Origin: Fimbriosthenelais zetlandica
Lineage: Eukaryota
Length of the DNA: 64,000 nucleotides
Assembly (NCBI GenBank): GCA_977030845.1
Contig: OZ365113.1
Coordinates: 34,286,001 to 34,350,000 of the forward strand
Direction of reading: 5' to 3'
The translations under genes and the position numbers were made by a program. Shown here piece by piece: positions 430 to 12,900 of this stretch (position 1 is the stretch's first letter; each line of letters starts with the position of its first letter). The notes beneath the pieces were generated by a model. The model was not told the origin of the DNA and did not search any database. It worked only from the letters and a program-made list of their open reading frames with translations.

Positions 430-3400
430 GTATGACGTCACATTTCTATTGGGTGGCCAGTGACAGTTGGGGGTCGAAGCTCTACCCTGTAGAGCGACAG
501 GAATGGGCGGCCGAGGGCACGGTAACAGTCCTCCCTCAAACTGAAGAATTGTCAGGTAAATTCACACTTAAATCTTTAATGTTCCCTCTCTAGTAATGTC
601 ATGACCCGATAGACGGACGCCCTGAAATCAGGAGCGATGCTATTGTGTCTTATAGAACCGATCTCCAAGCGATTTCGCGTCAAAACTAAAATAGATCGCT
701 TCAAAATTCAGCTTTGGAGATGCATTCGGCCTAGATCACTTTCATCTTCATCTGATCTAAATTTTATGACTACCTACTTTAGATTCAGTGATCTGTTCAA
801 ATGCAATTCCCAACCCACGAAAAGAGACATGTATGGTCTATTTCAAAAGTAGGGACCTGGATGTACATTTACAGGACAAAGGACAACCATGCCTATGGTT
901 GCACAACCATGTTTAGCCTATGGTTGCACAAGGGTCTTTAGGCCTATCATCGATCGAATATAGCATTGAACCTAAATACTATTGCCTATCATAATGTAGG
1001 GCATCTATATCAGGAAAAGTGCGGCAGAACCTGAGTCCTGCAATGCATTTTATGTGCATACAAAATATACTCAATGCATGGCCTTCCCCGTGTTAAATTA
1101 AACCAACGGTTTTCTTTGCCCAAGATCCGTAACATGAGTGCGAGTTAGTAACATTAAAGGTGCACAGTTTTATGATCATTTAACTATGAATAGAAACATA
1201 AATTGCCATAAAACTGGACGTGATTTTGTCTTATTAAACTACAGCAGCTCCATCTTTCTCCAGCAATAACGATGTGACAGCCACCATCTGAGCAAATGAA
1301 ATTGCGCCCACCTTTTATTCGTGAGCTGTTTTTTTCCAGGCCTGTCTCTGAAATGTGCAGGCTCATTTTTCATTTCTCATTTCTCGCCCAACAACAACAC
1401 CATGGTCAAGAGTTTCAGGAAATTCTCATATATGCATTGTAAGAATCCAATCTAGAAAGTACATGCTATAAGAGAGATCCCAGATTTGGCTGAGAAAAGT
1501 AATAATACTAATGCATACTGGCCAATGCATTGTGTATAGGCTATTCTTGGGATATTTCAATATGTTGGGAGCCCTCTGAACCAAAGCCCCTTTAAGATAT
1601 GAAGTTAGAAAAACAGCTAAGGAATACGATGTTATCAACAGGGTATAATAGGAAGGCACCTGGAACCTGTTTCATAACAGATCTAGAGTTGTAGTTGATG
1701 TCCACAATTCTTTCAGGTCATTGTACAGTAATGCTATAGCTTAATATATGGCTGTACAATGTGGATTGAGAACACAAGAATAGATTCAACAATAGGTTCA
1801 AGTACCGGAAGTGCTTTATGAGACTAAAAGAAACTGCTGTATTCTCACGAGACCTCTGCAGCTATAGAAACTGCTACGTTCATGACATTTATCACAGAAA
1901 TCTGCTAAAGTTCGGGTAAACGCAAATTTGTTATTTAACAGGATTGACAGTCTTAACCAAGGCAATGGGTGAGTGATTCAGTCAATGAAAACTTTAGATG
2001 TGACATCGCATTTAAGACATGCTAAGAGATAGCCTCTAAGCTTGAGCACTTTTCACCAGGAGCTTCCTTAAGCCTTAGCTGTATTCACCAAAAAATATGC
2101 AATTAAAATTGCATCGTGTCCATGTCATACTAGCACTTAGAGGGCGGGGATGTGAGAGCCTTGGTCAGGTCCAGGATATCCCACGAAATACGATAATGGA
2201 CAGTTTATCTATTATACACTATTTTACATTGAAAGTGATCCACAGAAAAAAAATGTTTTAGCCCATCAAGTGTTCTTGGAAAATATTCCTCGGGGCTATG
2301 ATGCTATATGATATCTTTATACATTGTTCCCCATCTATGCTTCTGTTCCTATTTCTGTTATAAAGTTCTAACTATATTACTTTTGCATTTACTTCAGGAT
2401 TCAATGATTACCTGGCCAATTTAAACCCTGCAACCAACACACGGAACCCCTGGTTTATAGAGTTCTGGGAAAAACATTTTCACTGTTCGTTTAGGAACGC
2501 ATCATCGCACTATAGAAGGTGTTCAGGTATGTTCGCTTCCTCTTTAAAATCATCAATTTATATATTATAGGTCTAGTTATGGCCTCATCCTCTTTCCCTC
2601 CTTCGCTCTCTATGCCTTCCTATCCCTTTCCCTATATGCTTCTCACTATCTTCCGCTTCTCACTATCTTCCCCTGACTAGAACTATTGCTAATTTTCTCT
2701 CCGCCCCTGCTCTCTCTTGCTCTCTCGGCCTTTGAGAGTGGAACCTCCCTCTCTTCTCTATCTCCCTTTCTGTCTCCTCCCTCTGTCTCTTACACTCTCT
2801 CCCCTTCCCTCTCTCTATGAAGATGTAAAATCAGGTTGTTGTACAACCATAGGCTAAAGCATTGTTGTACAACGACCTGATTGTCTATGCATATATGGAA
2901 TATCATTTCTAGCTATCAGATCATTAAAATATTAAAATACACAAATTATATAAAATATTAAAATATAAGATCATTTGAACATATTACAGGAAAAGAGAGG
3001 ATATCTCCTGAGACAGCCAAAGTCCTCCAGGAGGGCCTGGTACCGTTCGTGGTTGATGCGGTTTACGCCATGGCACACGCATTGTCTAATATGCATCGTG
3101 ACAAATGTCGGGGCAGATCTTATATATGTCCAGATATGCTTCCCATTGCTGGATCTGACCTCCTGTTTTACATCAGAAATGTATCATTTAGAGGTGAGTT
3201 ACTTTGACAAGTCCTTGCAGTAATGGTGGGTGATACGATAGATCGTATGGTTGTAGTGGGTTAGCTCCACTTGGGTTCTTTTACCTTGCAAGTGTACCTT
3301 CTCAACTCATCATAATTTACCATGCCCTCTAGCTAGACTGTCCTAGTATCAATTAGCACGCCTTTTGGATTAATTTCTTATGTAAACCTTTGGCAGGAAA

Positions 3401-6400
3401 GATAATTAACTGTGTCAAGGTATAGGACTGTATACATGTTCTTGTAACAGACAGTAACAATCTGAGCATTGGAATATTGCCATTCTGGTAACAGACAAAT
3501 ATGCTGCTGCATTTCTCCTCAGTTTTCCATTTGGCATTTGGTTTTGAGGAAATATTATATATCTATTCTATCAATGTGTACCGTTTTAAATGCATGGGAT
3601 ACCTCAAGTGACTTACGGTCATTTTCAATTCAAAATAAATCAAATTTCACTATGATACTTCAGTCAAGTTCAATCTCCTTTCTATTACATTTTACAGACC
3701 AAAGACTCTGGAGAATGTCCCTATGTTTTGGGCTTTAGAAAAAGACTCCAGGAGGGAGGACGAGATGAATGTTTTCGTGGATAAAACCCATCGTGAACAG
3801 TTCAAACTCAAACTTTCCCTGATACAAAAAGGCCAGCCACTACTCAGACACCAATGTATAAAAATATGAAGAAAATGAAATAGATGTTAATCCTTTATTT
3901 TGTTTTCTTTTTCTTTGTCAGGTATTACAGGCAATCATGTTCGATTTAATCAGGATGGAGACGCCTTGGGCAGATACACAGTCTACCAATACCAGAAACT
4001 GGAAGCTAATAAATATGATTACGTTGTCATAGGCAATTGGACGCATGGGTATGGATGGAATCCGTGAGCAATTATAAAATCTTTGCATGTGTAGCAAACC
4101 CCTTTTCTCCTCCATCAACAATTTAATTTCCAATTAGAATCCATTTATCGGAATACATCCCATGTGATTTGTCATCCCTCGAACCAAGTCCCTGCTGAAG
4201 CTTCATTAAGACTGAGATATTGGCTCATGAATACAGCCGTGGAAGGAATCACAATGGGCGAGTGCTATATTCAAGCGCGACAAAAATAAGTGCCGAGATA
4301 TGGACCTTCTTCCCCCATTTGTGTGTTTTAATTTTGTCATCCCACCTTCTTGTTGTCTCCTATACAACCTTCCCTCGATGGCCTCAAGCCAGTATATTGC
4401 ATGTTGTTTTCCCTCATACATTTCCTGCCTTACCCCCATCCCACCTTTTCAAGGGAAATACAATGGCAGTAATTGAATGCAGTTAAAATCAAACAGTCAT
4501 TCCATAAGAAACCATTCTGATGAATGGCAAAATTCCAGCCAGGGAATATTCCAGAATACATAACAGCCTGTGATCATTTCTTACAAATATCCTTAACAAT
4601 AAAGAGAAGGGTTGTTCCAGATGTCATGGAAAAGTTTTCAAAAGCATGGTACCTTTCCATACAGTAAATACACCTGTTCAATTGCACCTGCCCAGTATTC
4701 AATTTCACGGGTACAATACAACAGTATTGATCAATCTTTAGGTGTACTTCACCATTTATGATAACGAATTGAACCCCTCCACGTCTGTGGCTCAACACAA
4801 GGAGGGACCTTCCCTGGCCAATAATTTCACAAATCAATATTAGAGCCTTGCACAATCTTGTGCAGCTTGAAAGTGAAGGTAACCATTAGCACATGCTGTT
4901 CGTTTTTCAATCAAACCTCAATCAAACTGCTGGGATTAGTGTTCTCCAGGAAAAACTCACAGACTGATACAACGTGTCATGTTCCGGGGATGACTGGTGA
5001 AAAGTTACCAGAAAGCTTGTATTACAGATGTGAGACCAACCTGACACACTGGGGACATGGGAGAGGCTCTGTACTCCTAAAAATGTAATCAAAATGCAAG
5101 AGCGATCCGCCAAATGATTCTTCAGTCCCTTCAGCAAAATATTCAGACCTTTCTTCTATCACAAGCTACATGCATCGATTTTGATATTAAATTTTGATAA
5201 TATATTTTAAAGTAATATATATTTTGAAGTAAGTTTTGAGAATATATTGGATACATTATTAATTTGATTATTCATTGGATTAGATAAGTTAATATAAGAA
5301 ACATATTCAATTAATACTATTGTTTTAAGATTATGGAGCTGTTTTTAATGTGTGTTCCTCGTGTTTGTGATATGAATATTAATGGATCTCTTCCTGCATG
5401 GAATGTGCTCATTTGCATGTATGGTTGGTGTTGTTTACTTCTTGTGTCCAAAGTAAGAATTGGTGCTGGGCTTGACAAATTAATCACCCCGATATAATAT
5501 TTCAAAGCATCATTAACCTCATCCTACATCCAGTCTTATTAGTACATTGGCACAGTCAAGCTCAGGATTTCTCCTGGGAATATATATACAGCAAAAACCT
5601 GTTCTTTGGCAGTCAGATGAACTATACAGATTTTAGCTTGTCCAACTTCCAAACTTTAGTTTGAAAGTTAAAAAAATATAACATCGACATAAAAATCAAT
5701 ATACTCTCCAGGATGATAATTATCATTATCTTGATGCTCATTGGCATATTGGTAGTAATATATAATCAATAGAAGCAGAAATGGTACTAATTTAGATTTT
5801 AAATACATATTATTGTTGCATTTAAAATTCTGTATTATACACATACATGGCTTCCAATCAGCCATGGGTTAGGCTCCCTCTTTAGTCCTAATCATTAATA
5901 TTTGATTACTATATGAAACCATTTTATCGATCATTGCCAGGCCTTTCCTTTACCCTCTTAGATTATAATTGATTGGACATATCATGTAATGGATATGCCC
6001 CCTTATTTCATTATAACTACCCCGACTTTATACCATAATACATCTACAGATAGGGGGTGGGGGAGCTAATATCAACTGTCATTTAATATAATGACATATA
6101 TATCCATAATACCACACGAGGATCAGTTAGTGGGTATATGGGGCCCGGGGCTCCTTCATTTGTAACTTCCGGTATAAGAAGCTCACTGTCAACATCTATG
6201 TTGGCTATCATTTATCCCGGTCAATCAGCCAAGTGGGTCATGGACAATGATAGATTGGTTGATCAATTATTGATTGGGATAGCACAGAGCAATCCACGGG
6301 GCATGTTTCATAGAACGATGGTCTGTTCAAGGTGAAATACCATTCGTCTTAAGTTCCATTGCACACATGCCAAGCCATTGTACAACCATAGGCTAAAGCA

Positions 6401-9400
6401 TTGTTGTACAACCATGGGCTAAACCATTGTTGTACAACCATAGGCTAAACCATTGTTGTACAACCATAGGTAACCATTGTTGTACAACGGCCTGACTTTA
6501 TGACCCGATGGCCTCTAGATTCAATATTGAGAGTCTATAAAATTGAGTGCTGGCCCTTAGCTTCTATCCAATATTAGATATAATATTATATTATACATGT
6601 AAGAAAAATCAGGGCATTTAAGATAAGCAAAAAGTCTAGAATTACATAGGAAAACGCTTCTTTTTACTCCCTAAACTGCCTTAGCTATTTCTCTCCAAAC
6701 CCACAACACCGTTTGACTTTTTCTAGATACCAGAGCAAATTTATATCAGTGCTCTGAATATTTTTTGCTATGAAACGGACCCCGAAACTGTGTAACAGGG
6801 AAGGAAGAAAGGTGTACCAGTTAATCAGTAAGGCGTAGTTTTAAATGGCACTGTACTTAATCGTTTTCCTGATCATCAGTGATAGTTGGGGCATGGAGGG
6901 TGAGCAAAACAACACTCTTCCTCTCATACTTCAGTTCTGGTTAAAGATTTTTTTAGAATCCGAGATTGCTTTTGGGGGGATTGCTTTTTCATTTGTCATT
7001 TTTCCTAAGGTGTCATAACTGTTTATCCACATCTTATCTTTCCCTGGAAATTTGCTTTCTCATTTATCTATTTCTGATCAAATAATTAACTGTTGCAATT
7101 CATGACCACTTTTTACCAATTCCCATTCCACCCATCCATCATAATTAATTTGCTCATTTCAAGGATATCTGAATGTACTTGGAAGTCTAGACATCCTTTC
7201 AGACAACTGGAGCTAGCTACAAGCATGGAGTATATAGGAAATGCATGTTGCCATGTTAGGTAGTCCCTTGAGGTGACCTTGCAGTATGTTCGATTGGCTG
7301 GGATTCGTGTAACTAGGGGGAGACTTAGGACTCCTCTCTAATCGCACGCCCCTGACCCTATTGCCTCAGGCAAGACTTTTATACGGCCTCACTCAACTGG
7401 CTTAGGTTTTCCTCTTTTATTTTTTCTCCTGACTTGAGCAATCTTGTCGATATGTGAAGATGTTTGCTTTTTACACATATGGCACAAAATGCTTGAGAGT
7501 CACTTGGTCTTTCATTCACTTATGCACATTTTCCCATTCTTTTCCCTATGTCTAGATTCTCTCATATTTTCTCTTTTTCTCTTTTTTCTAGCATGAATTG
7601 ATATTATGCCTTTAGTCGAAGAAGTGTTTCACGGTTGACTAATAAAAAAATGTATATGTATTTTTCTTCAGACTGAATTTGGATCTTGGACGGGTTCAAT
7701 GGAAAAATGGATCTACCTCGATCCCCAAGTCAGTGTGTTCAGAGCCGTGTGCCCCTGGATATGTGAGATCTTCTAAAGGCCCCAATACTTGCTGCTGGGC
7801 CTGCATTAAATGCACAGAATATGAAATATTGCTGGACGAATACAGCTGTAGTGAATGTGCCAATGGATCTTTGCCGACCGAAAATAAAACTGCTTGCTTG
7901 CCACTTCCAATACTTTACATGTCTCTAGATAGCCCCTGGGCTATGGTTCCCGTGGTCTTCAGTTCAGTTGGAATACTCATGATCATCCTTACCATAGCTG
8001 TATTTGTGAAATATAACAAAACTCCTGTGATTATGGCTTCAGGGAGGGAGCTATGCTATGTACTTTTATTTGGACTTGCATTCTGCTATTCCATGACCTA
8101 CGTCATGGTCACTAGACCTAGCCTCTTCACATGTACTCTGCTGAGGATAGGCCTTGGCATGTCCCTCTCAATATGTTATGCTGCACTCTTCACTAAAACT
8201 AATAGAATCTCAAGGATTTTCAATCGTGGAATCAAAGCAATGGTTAAGCGTCCGAGCTACACAAGTCCTCGTTCCCAGCTGGTTATATGTGGGTGTCTTG
8301 TGTCTGTACAAGTCATGGGAGCCCTCACATGGCTGGGCATGGATGCCCCAGGCACATCCTATGCCTACCCTGACAGAAGAACTGTCATTCTTCGATGCAA
8401 AAGCACGAACTTTGCAATAGTTATGTCCCTTGTCTACAACATGATTCTGATTATATTATGTACTGTGTATGCCTTCAAAACACGCAAGATACCCGAGAAC
8501 TACAATGAGGCCAAATATATAGCATTTACCATGTATTCTACTTGTATTGTGTGGCTTGCATTTATACCAATATATTTTGGGACTAAAAATGACTATAAGG
8601 TAAGTGTAGTGTCATATTTTAACATATCTCTTGTCCCCCTCTCCTCCGGTCCCCCTATTTAGCTCTCCTCCCTCTTCCCTCCCCCTCTTCCCTATCCCTT
8701 TTTCCTCTCCCTGTCTCCAACTACCCCCTCTCTGTATCTCTCTCACTGCTCTACCTCCCCCCCTCTCTCTCTCTCTCTCTCTGTCCCTCTCTGTCTCCAT
8801 CTACCCCCTCCTTGTATCGCTCTTCCCCCTCTCTATCTGTCCCTCTCTATGTCCCTCTCTAATCATGTAATATGATATAAATATCAGGTGGCTGTTTTAA
8901 GCGCTGCTGTGTGAGGCTATTTTACCACTATTATCTACACTGTTCCAGCCTCGCGCTCCATTTGCCGGAGCACAACATCGCCACTCATTATCCCCTTTGT
9001 TAAGACCCTCCTCTCCTTTTTGAGTTTGAATGATTTGATGGCTCATAACGCTTAGGACTCTAAGCAAAGGCAATAACTTTGCCAATTGGCAATCGGGAAC
9101 ACCTTGCTTCCCCCCTATTACAAAGGGAAGGTGGGCCCTGTTATTGGCTGTTCTAGCCGTTTTTAAGCTGTTTCTATGACCTGTTAAAAGCACTTATAAC
9201 CTTGGTTTTTATCTCTGATTCCCTTCCAGCTTGCTCTGTTCTGAGTGATGCAGTTAGAAACAGAATTAGATGATAAACATTATTTCCAAGTATGAAATTC
9301 TGATGCTGGGATGCTTTTGACATTCGAGTTTTCCAGCAATTCCATTTCAAATCCTTTGCTATTATTTCCTTGGCAAAATCTGACTGGCATATCTGAGTGA

Positions 9401-9969
9401 ATGTTTCTCGAAAGGAAGAAAGAGAGCCATCCTGGATGGTAATAAAATTGTATAAAGACCCCCTCCTTACAATATTATTCACTTAATTTCCAAGAACATA
9501 TTTTGCATAAGATGATTATGAGCCATTCTGACGTTAAAAGCCCCATGCAATTAATTCATTATGTTCCACTGACAGAAATCAAGCAAATTAGATCAAGACG
9601 TAAAATGTTTAACGCAGTAGGATGCTATATTTAGCGTCCTGTCGCTTCCTGCACTAAACAATGCCATTTTACCAAACGCTGTCAACTGGATTATATTGCC
9701 TACCGCTCTTCCCCTTACTTCAATAGAAAGCCTATGGCAATTGCTGGAATAACAAAATGATCAGCAAACGTCAGTGTCATTGTCTCTTAATAATAATTTC
9801 TTTCTCCAGGTCCAAATAACTGCTTTGTGCATGTGTCTCAACATCTCGGCTGCGGTTGCCTTTGGTTGCATGTTTGCACCAAAAATGTACATAGTGCTCT
9901 GCCAGCCTCACAAGAATGTTCGCCAGTCGGTCGGCATTGCTGCTGCTTTGAATCCACAGCGGACAAGTG
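430..9969 (+). CDS. Metabotropic glutamate receptor family (class C GPCR), 5'-partial; exons join(430..555,2398..2526,2990..3193,3922..4048,7672..8599,9810..9969); C-terminal tail continues downstream
   Basis: All six exons have AG/GT boundaries with matching phases (1,1,1,2,0,1). Translation gives Venus-flytrap motifs (HFYWVASDSWG, NTRNPWFIEFWE..F.C, QEGLVPFVVDAVYAMAHAL), a Cys-rich domain (SVCSEPC..G......CCW.C..C) and a 7TM domain (TPVIMASGRELCY, KTNRISRIF, YAFKTRKIPENYNEAKYIAFTMYSTCIVWLAFIP, FAPKMYIVL.QP.KN). Confidence 0.96.
887..932 (-). repeat. Diverged copy of the 26-bp 'gttgtacaaccataggctaaa' repeat family
   Basis: Reverse complement reads gtgcaaccataggctaaacatggttgtgcaaccataggcatggttgt. 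Confidence 0.7.
2581..2818 (+). repeat. CT-rich polypyrimidine low-complexity tract (mGluR intron)
   Basis: Predominantly C/T sequence. Confidence 0.85.
2829..2882. mobile_element. 54-bp MITE-like hairpin with 19-bp terminal inverted repeats (1 mismatch), same family as the 6376-6496 array
   Basis: AATCAGGTTGTTGTACAAC ... GTTGTACAACGACCTGATT. Confidence 0.55.
6376..6496 (+). repeat. Minisatellite of about 5 x 26-bp units (cattgttgtacaaccataggctaaac)
   Basis: Units at 6376, 6399, 6425, 6451 and 6475, the last partial and ending ggcctga. Confidence 0.92.
8631..8860 (+). repeat. CT-rich polypyrimidine tract including a (CT)n microsatellite
   Basis: Predominantly C/T sequence; (ct)n around 8763-8781. 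Confidence 0.9.
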
Positions 9970-12900
9970 GTAAGAAAATTCTTTTCCGTTGTATCATTTA
10001 AATGTCAATATTTAACCTAATTTCTACTACCCTCTCTACGTCTTTGGGTTAATTACTTGATATTTTATACACTGTGTTCATATTCAAACTGTATTTGGGC
10101 GATGCTATAATGTCTTAAGTGTGTTTAAGTAAAATTAATATTCTCATAAGCTGCCCTTCAGATTCCTTGGGAAATCCATGGGGATGTGTTTGGGGTCTCT
10201 CTTAACCCTTTAAACAAATAAGAATAGACCAGAAGATCGTCAGAACGATAGCAACGTGAATGTTATGACCAGTTGTAGCCTACAGACTCGACATATTATG
10301 ATGAAATAAGTGAACATAAATTGTTCACTAATTTATGAGTCTACTCATACACGTCAAGGAAGTGAGGCTTTGGAAGACAATTAGTGAAAGGCTATGAATT
10401 ATCAAGGTGGTTCAGGTGGAGGTATTTAAATCAGTCGTCTGACATTAATGTCATGATAGAGGCTAATGATGAGTGAATGTGACTGGAGGTAGATAGACTA
10501 TATAGAGAGACATTCTCAGCTTTTATGAGACTTTACAAATGACACCAAACAAGCAGGCTGCCTTCCACTCATTCATAAACAAGTTTTGCTGCAACAAGCT
10601 CTTCCTGGCCTGGGCAGATGCCAAACAAGGGGAGATGCAACAAGGGGACACACAGGAAGTCACCATTTGTCCTGCCCAGGGAATGCCTCGTCTATTGATA
10701 AATTGAGATATAATTGTTCACCACAGTTTCAGTTGCAGTAAAAAATGTGCCTGATGAAATCCTATAGGTACGCTATAATGGTACTCGGCAGTCCAGAAGT
10801 TTGTTACCATCAGTGGACTGGGGAACCCCCTAAGTGGGAGGTATTTGCCTCGTTCTGCCCAAAGGAAATCCTGGATGAACCAATTACTTCATACAGGGTG
10901 ACCTCATTTGGAGAGCTCTGATTGGTTGATGACATTGACGTCATCCCAGCGTCACTGATACTGACCTGTGATTCTCTGTGACAACCATGTCCACTCAAAA
11001 CGTGTTGTAATAGGTGTCAAAGTGTGATATTTCATGGTTTGGGTTTCATGGCATGGATTCGCCTTGGGCTCTGCTGTGCTCTGCCCTCAACATATCAATC
11101 CGCCACGTTCCCTGGCATGATACGACTATATATACCCTTGACTGCCTACCCTTAGTCAGTTCTATGTATGATCTGCATTTGCTAGGTTTATGAGTGTTTA
11201 TGTCCATCACTAATGGTGGGCAGATACCACATATGTGTCGTCTACATATATATGTAACCACTCTTATCTCAGCCCAGAGCTGAGGCATGGACTGAGCACA
11301 TCAGATGCTGCCCAGTATAGTGTCAGCACCATGAAAAGCTTATGAATCCTTATGAAGTGTCAGAGATATGTCAGTGAATTCACAGAGATCTCTTGACAGG
11401 CTCTCGCGTGAATGACATTCACTATAGACAGCCTGCCTTGACAGGCTCGCCTGCAATGCCATCTTTTTGTCCACAGCCAAAATGATGGTGTATTAATGGT
11501 CCCTTTTTCCCCGGTGATGTTGCTTCATTTCTCCATTTTAACATCTTCATCAGTGAATGAATATAGAGGATATTATCAGGCAAATGTGACTTTCAGGGTC
11601 AGAAAGGTATTTGAAAATGTATACATGTATTATAAGGAGAAGCTCTGCTTTCATTTGAATGATATTCATAAAAGTTTCAAGCAATCCAAGCCTGATCAAT
11701 CAAGCCAAAAATGAAACTTTCATTTTCAAACTGAATCAGATACTCGTTCAATGCTGTGGACTGTATTGCTAGATGGTTGTTTTTTGAAAGTGGACATGAA
11801 TTGTAAGTTCATATCGCTCAGAATGCCATATTACGTGAAGTATTTATATATAATATAAGAAGGGATTTAATCGGGATTCTCAATGATTATTTTACATTCA
11901 TTAGAAAGAAATAAACCCATGGGAGATTATCAGGAATACCGCACCAATATCATCGCTATAGGGTAATACATATTGATGAGAATTATTATTGAAGATAATT
12001 AAGGATACAAAAAGTAACAGTATGTTCCCTTGGCATCCAGAATGTAATAGACTAATGCATGTGCAGTCGACAGCTATTTTTAGTGCATTCCAATATATTA
12101 TGGCAAAACAGAGTACTGCAATGAACATGTACATGTACCTATATTCCGGCTATCACCCAAAAAGCCATAACTGTCCGTGTTTTGTGCCCAGCTACCCGTT
12201 AGATGCTACTTAAGCATCTGCGGCCTTTACACACTAAGCACAAAAAGTGCTAAGCAAATATACAGAGATTCTAAGCTTATTCAGACTGAATTTCTCCTTT
12301 CACAATAGGCTGGCCAAATAAGCTTATACGAGAATTATATGAGAATATTCAAAGGTATAATATTATATGGCTGATTCTCAATTATTGGTGGACTGATTGC
12401 ACTTTTGGCTTGGTGTGAACGAGGCTTTATAGTGCCAATATCTACGATATCTCCCCCCTCCAGGGTTGAAGTAGATTCATAATTGGGACAGTCCTATGCA
12501 GCAGTAGGTGAGATTTGCTCTGGAAAAACAGCCTGCTGGTCCATTTACATCGCCAAGTGAAGGCATTCCCGTACAAGCCCAGCCACAAGGCAAAGAGGAA
12601 AATGCTCTGAGCACAGACTGTATCTTTTAACTGGTTAGGCCTCTATATATGGTTCAACCACTGAAGCAAATGGGTAAAGTTGCCCGAGCAAAAGCCCTAG
12701 AAGCAAGTGATGGGGGCTGACGAGGTGCTGGGAGCAGCAGCTAACATTATGACAACATTCCTTGAGCGGTGAAATAGGGTCAGTGTGAGGTCGCCGCCGG
12801 AAGTAGCGATGTCTGCGGCATCAGTAGTGAAAAGTGGACCGGAAGTAGGTCCGTATTTATGGCCTGGGGTCTCGTAAGCACGTGACTACAGACGAGGGCT

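What the first reader, a model, noticed from the sequence alone, without database searches (positions are those of the whole stretch)
3028..3057. mGluR lacks the glutamate gamma-carboxyl-binding lysine (QEGLVPF instead of QEGKVQF): probable non-glutamate, mXR/class IV-like receptor
Seen: codon 3037-3039 is CTG (Leu) in Q-E-G-L-V-P-F-V-V-D-A-V-Y-A-M-A-H-A-L, while the alpha-amino-binding Asp in WVASDSWG (exon 430-555) is retained. Established: the aligned Lys (K409 of rat mGlu1; QDSK/QESK/QEGK in groups I-III) contacts the distal carboxylate of glutamate. The insect mXR/Mangetout receptor has lost the distal-carboxylate residues, is glutamate-insensitive and responds to L-canavanine. From memory, the QEGLVPFVVDA and post-TM6 NDYK.Q segments resemble mXR-type sequences. 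Inference: an orphan amino-acid receptor of a clade absent from vertebrates, in an apparently deuterostome invertebrate.
Basis: partly seen in the sequence, partly recalled or inferred. Interest (0 to 1): 0.7.

Follow-up and report, generated by a model that had tools for sequence, protein, structure and literature searches.

The report
Class III mGluR with leucine pocket
This is an intact annelid-type counterpart of the vertebrate mGlu4/6/7/8 receptors, not an mXR/class IV receptor, and its leucine in place of a glutamate-contacting lysine is shared by every protostome and hemichordate counterpart examined, so whether these receptors still sense glutamate is an open, testable question.

Summary
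Codon 3037-3039 is CTG (Leu) in QEGLVPFVVDAVYAMAHAL, aligned to the Lys of QEGKVQFVIDAVYAM in solved mGlu4.

The classification does not hold. I rebuilt the gene as 9 GT-AG exons (C19:34236133-34296001), giving 866 aa with VFT, cysteine-rich and 7TM domains.
- Arg78 is retained (EEKGIQRMEAM), as are Ser165, Thr188, Asp208, Tyr236 and Asp318.
- The group III residues Lys74, Asn-Glu, Ser313 and Lys317 are also retained. Only the Lys is replaced.
- In a careful ML tree the protein sits inside class III (100/99), sister to Capitella teleta mGluR4-8_Cte (100/99). Class IV (mangetout type) is a separate clade (100/100).
- Joining the gene to class IV is rejected (AU p = 4e-6).
- The same genome has a true class IV gene on C25 (Arg78 to Ala, QLQFVSD).
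- The host is a lophotrochozoan, probably an annelid, not a deuterostome.

The useful result is wider. Leu (rarely Val or Ala; Tyr in nematodes, Phe in an acanthocephalan) replaces the Lys in all 41 protostome and 3 hemichordate class III orthologues examined. Vertebrates, amphioxus and echinoderms keep Lys. I found no paper noting this.

The ligand is untested. The retained basic residues favour an acidic amino acid, probably glutamate with altered affinity.

An earlier scan note (s1-181659) reports a class IV mGluR elsewhere in this genome.

The parts
430..555 (+). Exon 4 of the class III mGluR gene (VFT lobe 2). Encodes GMTSHFYWVASDSWGSKLYP, with Asp310 (mGlu1 D318), Ser311 (mGlu4 S313) and Lys315 (mGlu4 K317).
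   Evidence: AG/GT borders and phase 1 on both sides; tblastn to P0121 and P0126; residue table.
2398..2526 (+). Exon 5 (VFT): GFNDYLANLNPATNTRNPWFIEFWEKHFHCSF...
   Evidence: tblastn to P0126, P0122 and P0131; AG/GT borders.
2990..3193 (+). Exon 6 (VFT): GKERISPETAKVLQEGLVPFVVDAVYAMAHALSNMHRDKC..., the exon that carries the finding.
   Evidence: Pfam ANF_receptor positions 273-325, E 2e-8. Best PDB matches are mGlu4, mGlu8, mGlu7 and mGlu6, E 4e-17 to 1.5e-12; mGlu1 and mGlu2 are about 1e-9.
3037..3039 (+). CTG codon for Leu400 of the model. It stands at the position of mGlu1 K409, mGlu4 K405 and mGlu7 K407.
   Evidence: Direct reading; alignment to mGlu4 QEGKVQF; alignments of 68 and 51 proteins.
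3922..4048 (+). Exon 7 (end of VFT): GITGNHVRFNQDGDALGRYTVYQYQ...
   Evidence: tblastn; AG/GT borders, phase 1 in and phase 2 out.
7672..8599 (+). Exon 8: cysteine-rich domain plus TM1-TM6, ending at ...FGTKNDYK.
   Evidence: Pfam NCD3G (E 2e-14) and 7tm_3 (E 4e-68); tblastn E 2e-115 to P0121; GTAAGT donor.
9810..10001 (+). Exon 9: TM7 (VQITALCMCLNISAAVAFGCMFAPKMYIVLCQPHKNVRQ) and the start of the tail. There is an in-frame stop at 9999-10001. A possible donor lies near 9971, so the true 3' end is unresolved.
   Evidence: tblastn to seven orthologues. Tails are not conserved beyond QPHKNVR, and no RNA run was listed.

Best explanation
The window holds exons 4-9 of the single class III metabotropic glutamate receptor gene of a lophotrochozoan, most likely an annelid. 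This gene is the orthologue of vertebrate mGlu4/6/7/8. Exons 1-3 lie 3-50 kb upstream.

The protein is a standard class C GPCR: signal peptide, Venus-flytrap domain, cysteine-rich domain and 7TM. By homology it should work like other mGluRs. An alpha-amino acid is clamped between the two flytrap lobes. Lobe closure in the dimer is passed through the cysteine-rich domain to the 7TM domain and a G protein, which is Gi/o in vertebrate class III.

All contacts for the alpha-carboxylate and alpha-amino groups are kept (Ser158, Thr181, Asp201, Tyr229, Asp310 in the model). Three of the four basic residues of the class III distal pocket are also kept: Lys72 (mGlu4 K74), Arg76 (R78) and Lys315 (K317). 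The fourth, mGlu4 K405, is Leu400.

This Leu is not a peculiarity of this gene. It is the standing state of class III receptors in protostomes and hemichordates.

Inference: the ligand is still an amino acid with an anionic distal group, most probably glutamate. With one charge fewer in the pocket, affinity should be lower and agonist selectivity shifted relative to vertebrate mGlu4/8.

Shown: gene structure, class, residues, phyletic pattern. Inferred: ligand, coupling, affinity.
For: - Gene model: nine GT-AG exons and an open 866-aa frame. Pfam finds ANF_receptor, NCD3G and 7tm_3.
- Class: careful ML tree of 51 proteins and 877 columns, with the trait columns masked. Class III including the model has support 100/99. 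The model is sister to Capitella P0456 at 100/99, inside Lophotrochozoa at 98/99.
- Capitella P0456 (CAPTEDRAFT_198326) and Lottia P0440 (LOTGIDRAFT_130755) are the proteins named mGluR4-8_Cte and mGluR4-8_Lgi in PMC6307864. The Saccoglossus Leu-type protein is their mGluR4-8_Sko.
- The best solved relatives of exon 1 and exon 6 are mGlu8, mGlu4 and mGlu7.
- VFT identity is 51-55% to vertebrate class III against 36-42% to class IV.
- Pocket: residue tables.
- Phyletic pattern: Leu, Val or Ala at the site in 17 molluscs, 2 annelids, a nemertean, a flatworm, 13 named arthropods, 3 unnamed assembly-derived proteins and 3 hemichordates. Nematodes have Tyr and an acanthocephalan has Phe. Vertebrates, amphioxus and echinoderms have Lys. 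Arg78 is present wherever the N-terminus is present.
- In an earlier, smaller set, only three columns of the whole protein separate 14 Leu/Val-type from 12 Lys-type class III proteins.
- mGlu7 K407 contacts glutamate and agonists in active structures (PMC13544217).
Against: - No functional datum exists for any Leu-type class III receptor in the literature I could search. The oyster 'CgmGluR6' work is mRNA correlation only.
- The equivalent Lys is described as crucial for glutamate activation (PMC2695807; PMC6307864), so loss of glutamate sensitivity cannot be excluded.
- Hemichordate Leu-type proteins have Gln at the Lys74 position, so the 'three basic residues kept' argument is weaker there.
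- No RNA run was listed, so expression and the 3' end are unverified.
Confidence: 0.6

Rival explanations
1. Same gene and same class III orthology, but the Leu marks a real change of ligand. Under this reading, protostome and hemichordate class III receptors no longer respond to glutamate at physiological levels and sense another amino acid or a related metabolite.
For: The Lys is one of two distal residues called crucial for glutamate activation. The replacement is non-conservative (charged to aliphatic). It has been held for hundreds of millions of years across phyla, which points to selection for a different pocket rather than drift. It co-varies with Val in place of Ala at the residue before the Asn-Glu pocket loop.
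Against: Arg78, Lys74 (in protostomes) and Lys317 are strictly kept. This is hard to explain if the distal group of the ligand were not anionic. Class IV receptors, which did abandon glutamate, lost Arg78 and the position-74 residue as well. Vertebrate class III has more basic distal residues than classes I and II, so some redundancy is plausible (established knowledge of the group III pocket; inference).
Confidence: 0.3
2. One reading: the gene is an mXR/mangetout-type (class IV) orphan receptor.
For: Only the loss of the Lys.
Against: Arg78 is retained. Class IV forms a separate clade at 100/100. The AU test rejects the model plus class IV, p 4e-6, delta lnL 154.9. Class IV motifs (GGxQA, QLQFVSDA, Phe at mGlu1 S186) are absent. 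The genome has its own class IV gene at C25:17877679-17995100 with GGLQA and QLQFVSD.
Confidence: 0.01
3. The receptor no longer needs its own agonist. It would serve mainly as a partner in heterodimers, for example with the adjacent class II receptor, whose intact pocket would supply glutamate sensing.
For: A class II gene with a complete glutamate pocket lies head-to-head about 33 kb upstream. Vertebrate mGlu2/4 heterodimers have been solved (PDB 8jd5 and 8wg9, listed).
Against: Every alpha-group contact and three distal basic residues are conserved, which argues for a pocket that is occupied. There is no evidence of co-expression. Gene adjacency alone is weak evidence.
Confidence: 0.05
4. 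Artefact or decaying gene: the Leu would be an assembly error, or the gene a pseudogene.
For: No RNA or DNA run could be listed to check the base calls or expression.
Against: Nine exons have canonical splice sites and no stop or frameshift. The protein is 64-69% identical to Capitella over its whole length. The same residue occurs in the orthologues.
Confidence: 0.02

Closest known systems
Vertebrate class (group) III mGluRs: mGlu4, mGlu6, mGlu7, mGlu8
   Same: Orthologous clade at 100/99. Same domain architecture. 51-55% VFT identity. Same pocket residues at mGlu4 K74, R78, S159, T182, Y230, N286, E287, D312, S313 and K317. Best PDB matches for exons 1 and 6.
   Different: Leu instead of mGlu4 K405 / mGlu7 K407. 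Val instead of Ala just before the Asn-Glu loop. Ser instead of Tyr at model position 674 in the 7TM region. The post-TM6 loop reads NDYK rather than QSAEKxY. Pharmacology is untested.
mGluR4-8_Cte (Capitella teleta CapteG198326), mGluR4-8_Lgi and mGluR4-8_Sko of Ramos-Vicente et al. 2018 (PMC6307864)
   Same: Direct orthologues. Capitella is sister at 100/99 with 64-69% identity. All carry QEGLV and Arg78.
   Different: None of substance. The paper files them as class III and does not comment on the missing Lys in the text I could read.
Class IV mGluRs: insect mXR / Drosophila mangetout (mtt) and relatives
   Same: Class C receptors close to mGluRs. They keep the alpha-amino and alpha-carboxyl contacts and have lost the distal Lys.
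   Different: Class IV has also lost Arg78 (Ala, Pro, Thr or Phe) and the residue at position 74. It reads QLQFVSDA or variants and forms a separate clade sister to classes I-III. The window gene keeps Arg78 and is rejected from that clade. Canavanine sensitivity is known only for DmXR.
Nematode class III-like receptors (C. elegans mgl-3 is called the GRM7 orthologue in PMC11940234)
   Same: Same class III clade within protostomes. Arg78 is kept and the distal Lys is replaced.
   Different: Tyr, not Leu, at the site, and long branches. I did not verify that the Trichuris, Globodera and Pristionchus proteins are mgl-3 orthologues.

Membership tests
Class III mGluR (mGlu4/6/7/8 orthologues) | Class C architecture: Venus-flytrap (ANF_receptor) + cysteine-rich (NCD3G) + 7tm_3 | tested here: met
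   Pfam hits on exons 1, 2, 6 and 8; ANF_receptor exon hits in the genome scan.
Class III mGluR (mGlu4/6/7/8 orthologues) | Phylogenetic placement inside the clade that holds vertebrate mGlu4/6/7/8, apart from classes I, II and IV | tested here: met
   Careful ML tree: clade support 100/99, and all four classes are monophyletic. The quick tree of 68 rows agrees at 100.
Class III mGluR (mGlu4/6/7/8 orthologues) | Class III pocket signature besides the common contacts: Lys at mGlu4 K74, Asn-Glu at 286/287, Ser313, Lys317 | tested here: met
   The model has K72, N284-E285, S311 and K315.
Class III mGluR (mGlu4/6/7/8 orthologues) | Distal Lys (mGlu4 K405 / mGlu1 K409) contacting the agonist's distal acid group | tested here: not met
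   Leu400. The same holds for all protostome and hemichordate members of the clade. This residue is therefore a feature of the chordate and echinoderm members rather than of the clade as a whole.
Class III mGluR (mGlu4/6/7/8 orthologues) | Activation by L-glutamate, L-AP4 or L-SOP, and Gi/o coupling | not testable with these tools
   Needs heterologous expression.
Class IV mGluR (mXR / mangetout type) | Both Arg78 and Lys409 non-conservatively replaced (definition in PMC6307864; 'two residues' in PMC2695807) | tested here: not met
   Arg76 of the model (EEKGIQRMEAM) aligns with Arg78. Only the Lys is replaced.
Class IV mGluR (mXR / mangetout type) | Grouping with Drosophila mtt-type proteins, sister to classes I-III | tested here: not met
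   Class IV clade at 100/100 without the model. The AU test of model plus class IV gives p 4e-6.
Class IV mGluR (mXR / mangetout type) | Insensitive to glutamate; activated by L-canavanine (DmXR) | not testable with these tools
   Needs expression and pharmacology.

The most novel reading that the evidence does not exclude
Class III mGluRs of protostomes and hemichordates form a functionally distinct receptor type whose ligand is not glutamate, or is glutamate only at very high concentration. On this reading the 'group III glutamate autoreceptor' would be confined to chordates and echinoderms. Invertebrate genes annotated mGluR4/6/7/8-like would be misnamed orphan amino-acid receptors. The Lys/Leu switch, together with Ala/Val at the neighbouring pocket loop, would be the molecular toggle. 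It changed at least twice on the tree, and a single origin is not excluded (AU p 0.355).
Probability: 0.3. Interest if true: 0.7.

Novelty: new variant of a known kind. Interest (0 to 1): 0.45.

Why it matters
The gene itself is an ordinary member of a known receptor class. What matters is the pattern it exposes.

The published statement is that Arg78 and Lys409 are conserved in all mGluRs except class IV. That does not hold for class III outside chordates and echinoderms. Forty-four class III orthologues besides the window's own gene, from nine invertebrate phyla, carry a hydrophobic or aromatic residue where the agonist-contacting Lys should be.

This makes a concrete question testable: do invertebrate 'mGluR4/6/7/8-like' receptors sense glutamate? 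It bears on invertebrate neuropharmacology, for example L-AP4 effects and studies that assume these genes are glutamate receptors, such as the oyster CgmGluR6 work. It also offers a natural single-residue experiment on what sets agonist affinity and selectivity in group III mGluRs.

Tried and rejected
- Class IV/mXR membership was rejected on residues, tree and AU test.
- Hidden paralogy (separate ancient Leu-type and Lys-type class III genes) was neither shown nor excluded. The free tree follows the species tree, with hemichordates beside echinoderms at 92/81. Forcing all non-Lys proteins into one clade costs only 3.2 lnL, AU p 0.355.
- A second Lys-bearing exon 6, or a second class III gene in this genome, was not found at E <= 0.01.
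- RNA or DNA reads to verify expression, splicing and the codon: none was listed in two searches.
- The C-terminal exon or exons could not be placed, because orthologue tails are not conserved beyond QPHKNVR.
- Literature on mutagenesis of the Lys (K409A, K405A and similar) and on any note of Leu in invertebrate class III: nothing relevant in the held library. Mitri et al. 2004 (JBC) is not held.
- Papers on oyster CgmGluR6 and Schistosoma SjGRM7 give no pharmacology for a Leu-type class III receptor.
- Structure prediction was not run.
- The first Pfam call failed on a wrong frame and was redone.
Full report
**Observation.** Window 3028-3057 reads CAG GAG GGC CTG GTA CCG TTC GTG GTT GAT, so codon 3037-3039 is CTG (Leu) within QEGLVPFVVDAVYAMAHAL. 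The exon at 430-555 encodes WVASDSWGSK with the Asp retained. Against all PDB chains, the exon-6 peptide matches mGlu4 best (E 4e-17), then mGlu8, mGlu7 and mGlu6. mGlu1 and mGlu2 are about seven orders of magnitude weaker. The Leu aligns with the Lys of QEGKVQFVIDAVYAM.

**Gene model.** The window is G000:C19:34286001-34350000, and the gene starts upstream of it. A genome scan with Pfam ANF_receptor gave plus-strand exon hits at C19:34236355, 34275608 and 34288959. I fetched 60 kb upstream and laid full-length homologues on it by tblastn. This gave nine exons, all with AG/GT borders and consistent phases:

| Exon | Coordinates | Content |
|---|---|---|
| E1 | C19:34236133-34236648 | ATG and a hydrophobic signal-like N-terminus |
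| E2 | C19:34275632-34275848 | VFT |
| E3 | C19:34282624-34282785 | VFT |
| E4 | window 430-555 | VFT |
| E5 | window 2398-2526 | VFT |
| E6 | window 2990-3193 | VFT, carries the Leu codon |
| E7 | window 3922-4048 | end of VFT |
| E8 | window 7672-8599 | cysteine-rich domain, TM1-TM6 |
| E9 | window 9810-10001 | TM7 and start of tail |

The reading frame is open for 866 aa. The exons score for ANF_receptor, NCD3G and 7tm_3. The 3' end is unresolved: the tail is not conserved in orthologues, and no RNA run was listed.

**Binding pocket.** In alignments with 68 and 51 mGluR-family proteins, the model keeps these residues:
- Arg76, equivalent to mGlu1 Arg78 (EEKGIQRMEAM);
- Ser158 (S165), Thr181 (T188), Asp201 (D208), Tyr229 (Y236) and Asp310 (D318);
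- the class III-specific Lys72 (mGlu4 K74), Asn284-Glu285 (N286-E287), Ser311 (S313) and Lys315 (K317).

Exon 1 aligns without gaps to mGlu8 across KEKGIHRLEAM. The only canonical contact missing is the distal Lys.

**Class.** A search of 1.84 billion representatives with the 7TM exon, and two word-index searches with full-length hits, gave named relatives. Pocket signatures sort them cleanly:

| Class | Signature residues | Motif at the Lys site |
|---|---|---|
| I | Y-R...E-G...R | K(M/L)GF |
| II | R-R-Y-S...Q | QESK |
| III | K-R...N-E-D-S-K | QEG(K/L)V |
| IV | G-A...F | QLQFVSDA |

The class IV proteins include those of Drosophila, a hoverfly, a moth, a psyllid and a scorpion. They have Arg78 replaced by Ala and the Lys replaced by Gln.

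The careful IQ-TREE analysis used 51 rows, 877 columns and the LG+C20+F+G4 PMSF model, with the two trait columns masked. All four classes are monophyletic:
- Class III including the model has support 100/99, and class IV 100/100.
- The model is sister to Capitella teleta P0456 (100/99), inside Lophotrochozoa (98/99), inside protostomes (93/99).
- Constraining the model to class IV costs 154.9 log-likelihood units and is rejected (AU p 4e-6).
- VFT identity is 69% to Capitella, 51-55% to vertebrate class III and 36-42% to class IV.

The published classification agrees. Ramos-Vicente et al. 2018 define class IV by non-conservative replacement of both Arg78 and Lys409. They list CapteG198326 (my P0456), LotgiG130755 (P0440) and the Saccoglossus Leu-type protein as mGluR4-8_Cte, mGluR4-8_Lgi and mGluR4-8_Sko, that is, class III. 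CapteG168165 (my P0260) and mangetout are their class IV.

**Repertoire of this genome.** Own-genome searches show one gene of each class:

| Class | Location | Motif |
|---|---|---|
| I | C27:1948254-2023732 (+) | QDAKLGFVVNAI |
| II | C19:34192307-34202791 (-) | QESKIQFVYDAVYAM |
| III | the window gene | QEGLVPFVVDAVYAM |
| IV | C25:17877679-17995100 (-) | GGLQATEAM (Arg78 to Ala), QLQFVSD (Lys to Gln) |

The class II gene lies head-to-head about 33 kb from exon 1 of the window gene. The organism therefore has its own mXR-type gene, and the window gene is not it. An earlier scan note (s1-181659) also reports a class IV mGluR on another piece of this genome. I cannot confirm that it is the same locus.

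**The wider pattern.** The Leu is a property of the clade, not of this gene. The residue at the site is as follows:

| Group | Residue at the site |
|---|---|
| 17 molluscs (gastropods, bivalves, cephalopods) | Leu |
| Capitella | Leu |
| Owenia | Val |
| A nemertean | Ala |
| Macrostomum | Leu |
| 13 named arthropods (horseshoe crabs, scorpion, spider, mite, crabs, barnacle, centipede, millipede, sawfly, mayfly) | Leu |
| 3 unnamed assembly-derived proteins | Leu |
| Three hemichordates | Leu, Leu, Val |
| Three nematodes | Tyr |
| An acanthocephalan | Phe |
| Vertebrates, two amphioxus paralogues, three sea stars, a crinoid | Lys |

Arg78 is present in every sequence whose N-terminus is present.

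Across the whole protein, only three columns separate 14 Leu/Val-type from 12 Lys-type class III proteins in an earlier, smaller set: the site itself, Val against Ala at the residue before the Asn-Glu pocket loop, and Ser against Tyr in the 7TM region.

On the tree the Lys/non-Lys state needs two changes. Hemichordates group with echinoderms (92/81), as orthology predicts. A single clade of all non-Lys proteins is not rejected (delta lnL 3.2, AU p 0.355). Convergence, reversal and ancient paralogy therefore all remain open.

**Mechanism.** What is shown is a class III receptor with an intact, conserved amino-acid clamp and a distal pocket reduced from four basic residues to three. What is known from elsewhere:
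- The equivalent Lys (mGlu7 K407) contacts glutamate and other agonists in active structures.
- With Arg78 it is called crucial for glutamate activation.
- DmXR, which lost both residues, is insensitive to glutamate.

My inference rests on the retained residues. Arg78, Lys74 (in protostomes) and Lys317 are strictly kept, whereas class IV discarded Arg78 and the position-74 residue once glutamate was abandoned. The ligand most likely still carries an anionic distal group, with glutamate the obvious candidate. One charge fewer should mean lower affinity and shifted selectivity. I put about 0.6 on this and about 0.3 on a real change of ligand within class III. No pharmacology of any Leu-type class III receptor was found.

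The host is not a deuterostome. The gene is nested in Lophotrochozoa next to an annelid, and the nearest named 7TM hit was the annelid Dimorphilus. The NDYK.Q segment after TM6 is shared with protostome class III (NDFKIQ, NDYKIQ) and resembles class II (SDYRVQ). Class IV reads NHVPLR, SNVEVN or TDIPLR.

**Verdict.** This is an ordinary, intact class III mGluR orthologue. The finding has moderate interest because it exposes a phylum-spanning pocket variant of class III mGluRs. As far as I could find, that variant is not remarked on in the literature, and it makes the ligand of invertebrate 'mGluR4/6/7/8-like' receptors a direct experimental question.

Noticed in passing
outside the window: G000:C19:34192307-34202791 (-), loci L011, L015, L016: A class II mGluR gene (QESKIQFVYDAVYAM, full glutamate pocket) lies head-to-head about 33 kb upstream of exon 1 of the class III gene. 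Most of its flytrap domain is in a single 484-aa open frame, whereas the class III flytrap is split over seven exons. In the table of Ramos-Vicente et al. the class II and class III genes of Saccoglossus (Sakowv30000206 and Sakowv30000203) and B. belcheri (183730R and 183640F) have near-consecutive ids. That hints at an ancient II-III linkage.
   Followed up: partly
outside the window: G000:C25:17877679-17995100 (-), loci L019-L031: A genuine class IV (mXR/mangetout-type) mGluR gene of about 117 kb, with GGLQATEAM (Arg78 to Ala) and QLQFVSDSV (Lys409 to Gln). It is 56% identical to a Lingula class IV protein over the 7TM exon.
   Followed up: partly
genome-wide, e.g. C19:22567683-22569668 (-), C10:9924872-9926890 (+), C13:26597046-26599073 (+): More than 20 intronless open frames of about 700-780 aa encode complete flytrap plus 7TM class C receptors. 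They are only 24-33% identical to mGluRs. This looks like a lineage expansion of orphan class C receptors.
   Followed up: no
window 2830-2882: A short hairpin element in the intron before exon 6: AATCAGGTTGTTGTACAAC ... GTTGTACAACGACCTGATT, with 19-base arms and one mismatch. It has at least 45 copies across the genome at 80-98% identity and is MITE-like.
   Followed up: partly
window 8600-8870: A CT-rich low-complexity stretch starts directly after the exon 8 donor. It gives long spurious Pro/Ser/Leu open frames in all three plus-strand frames.
   Followed up: no
alignment of class III proteins (model positions 283 and 674): Besides the Lys/Leu site, only two columns separate Leu-type from Lys-type class III proteins. 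One is Val against Ala just before the Asn-Glu pocket loop. The other is Ser against Tyr in ...KRPSYTSPRSQ of the 7TM region.
   Followed up: partly
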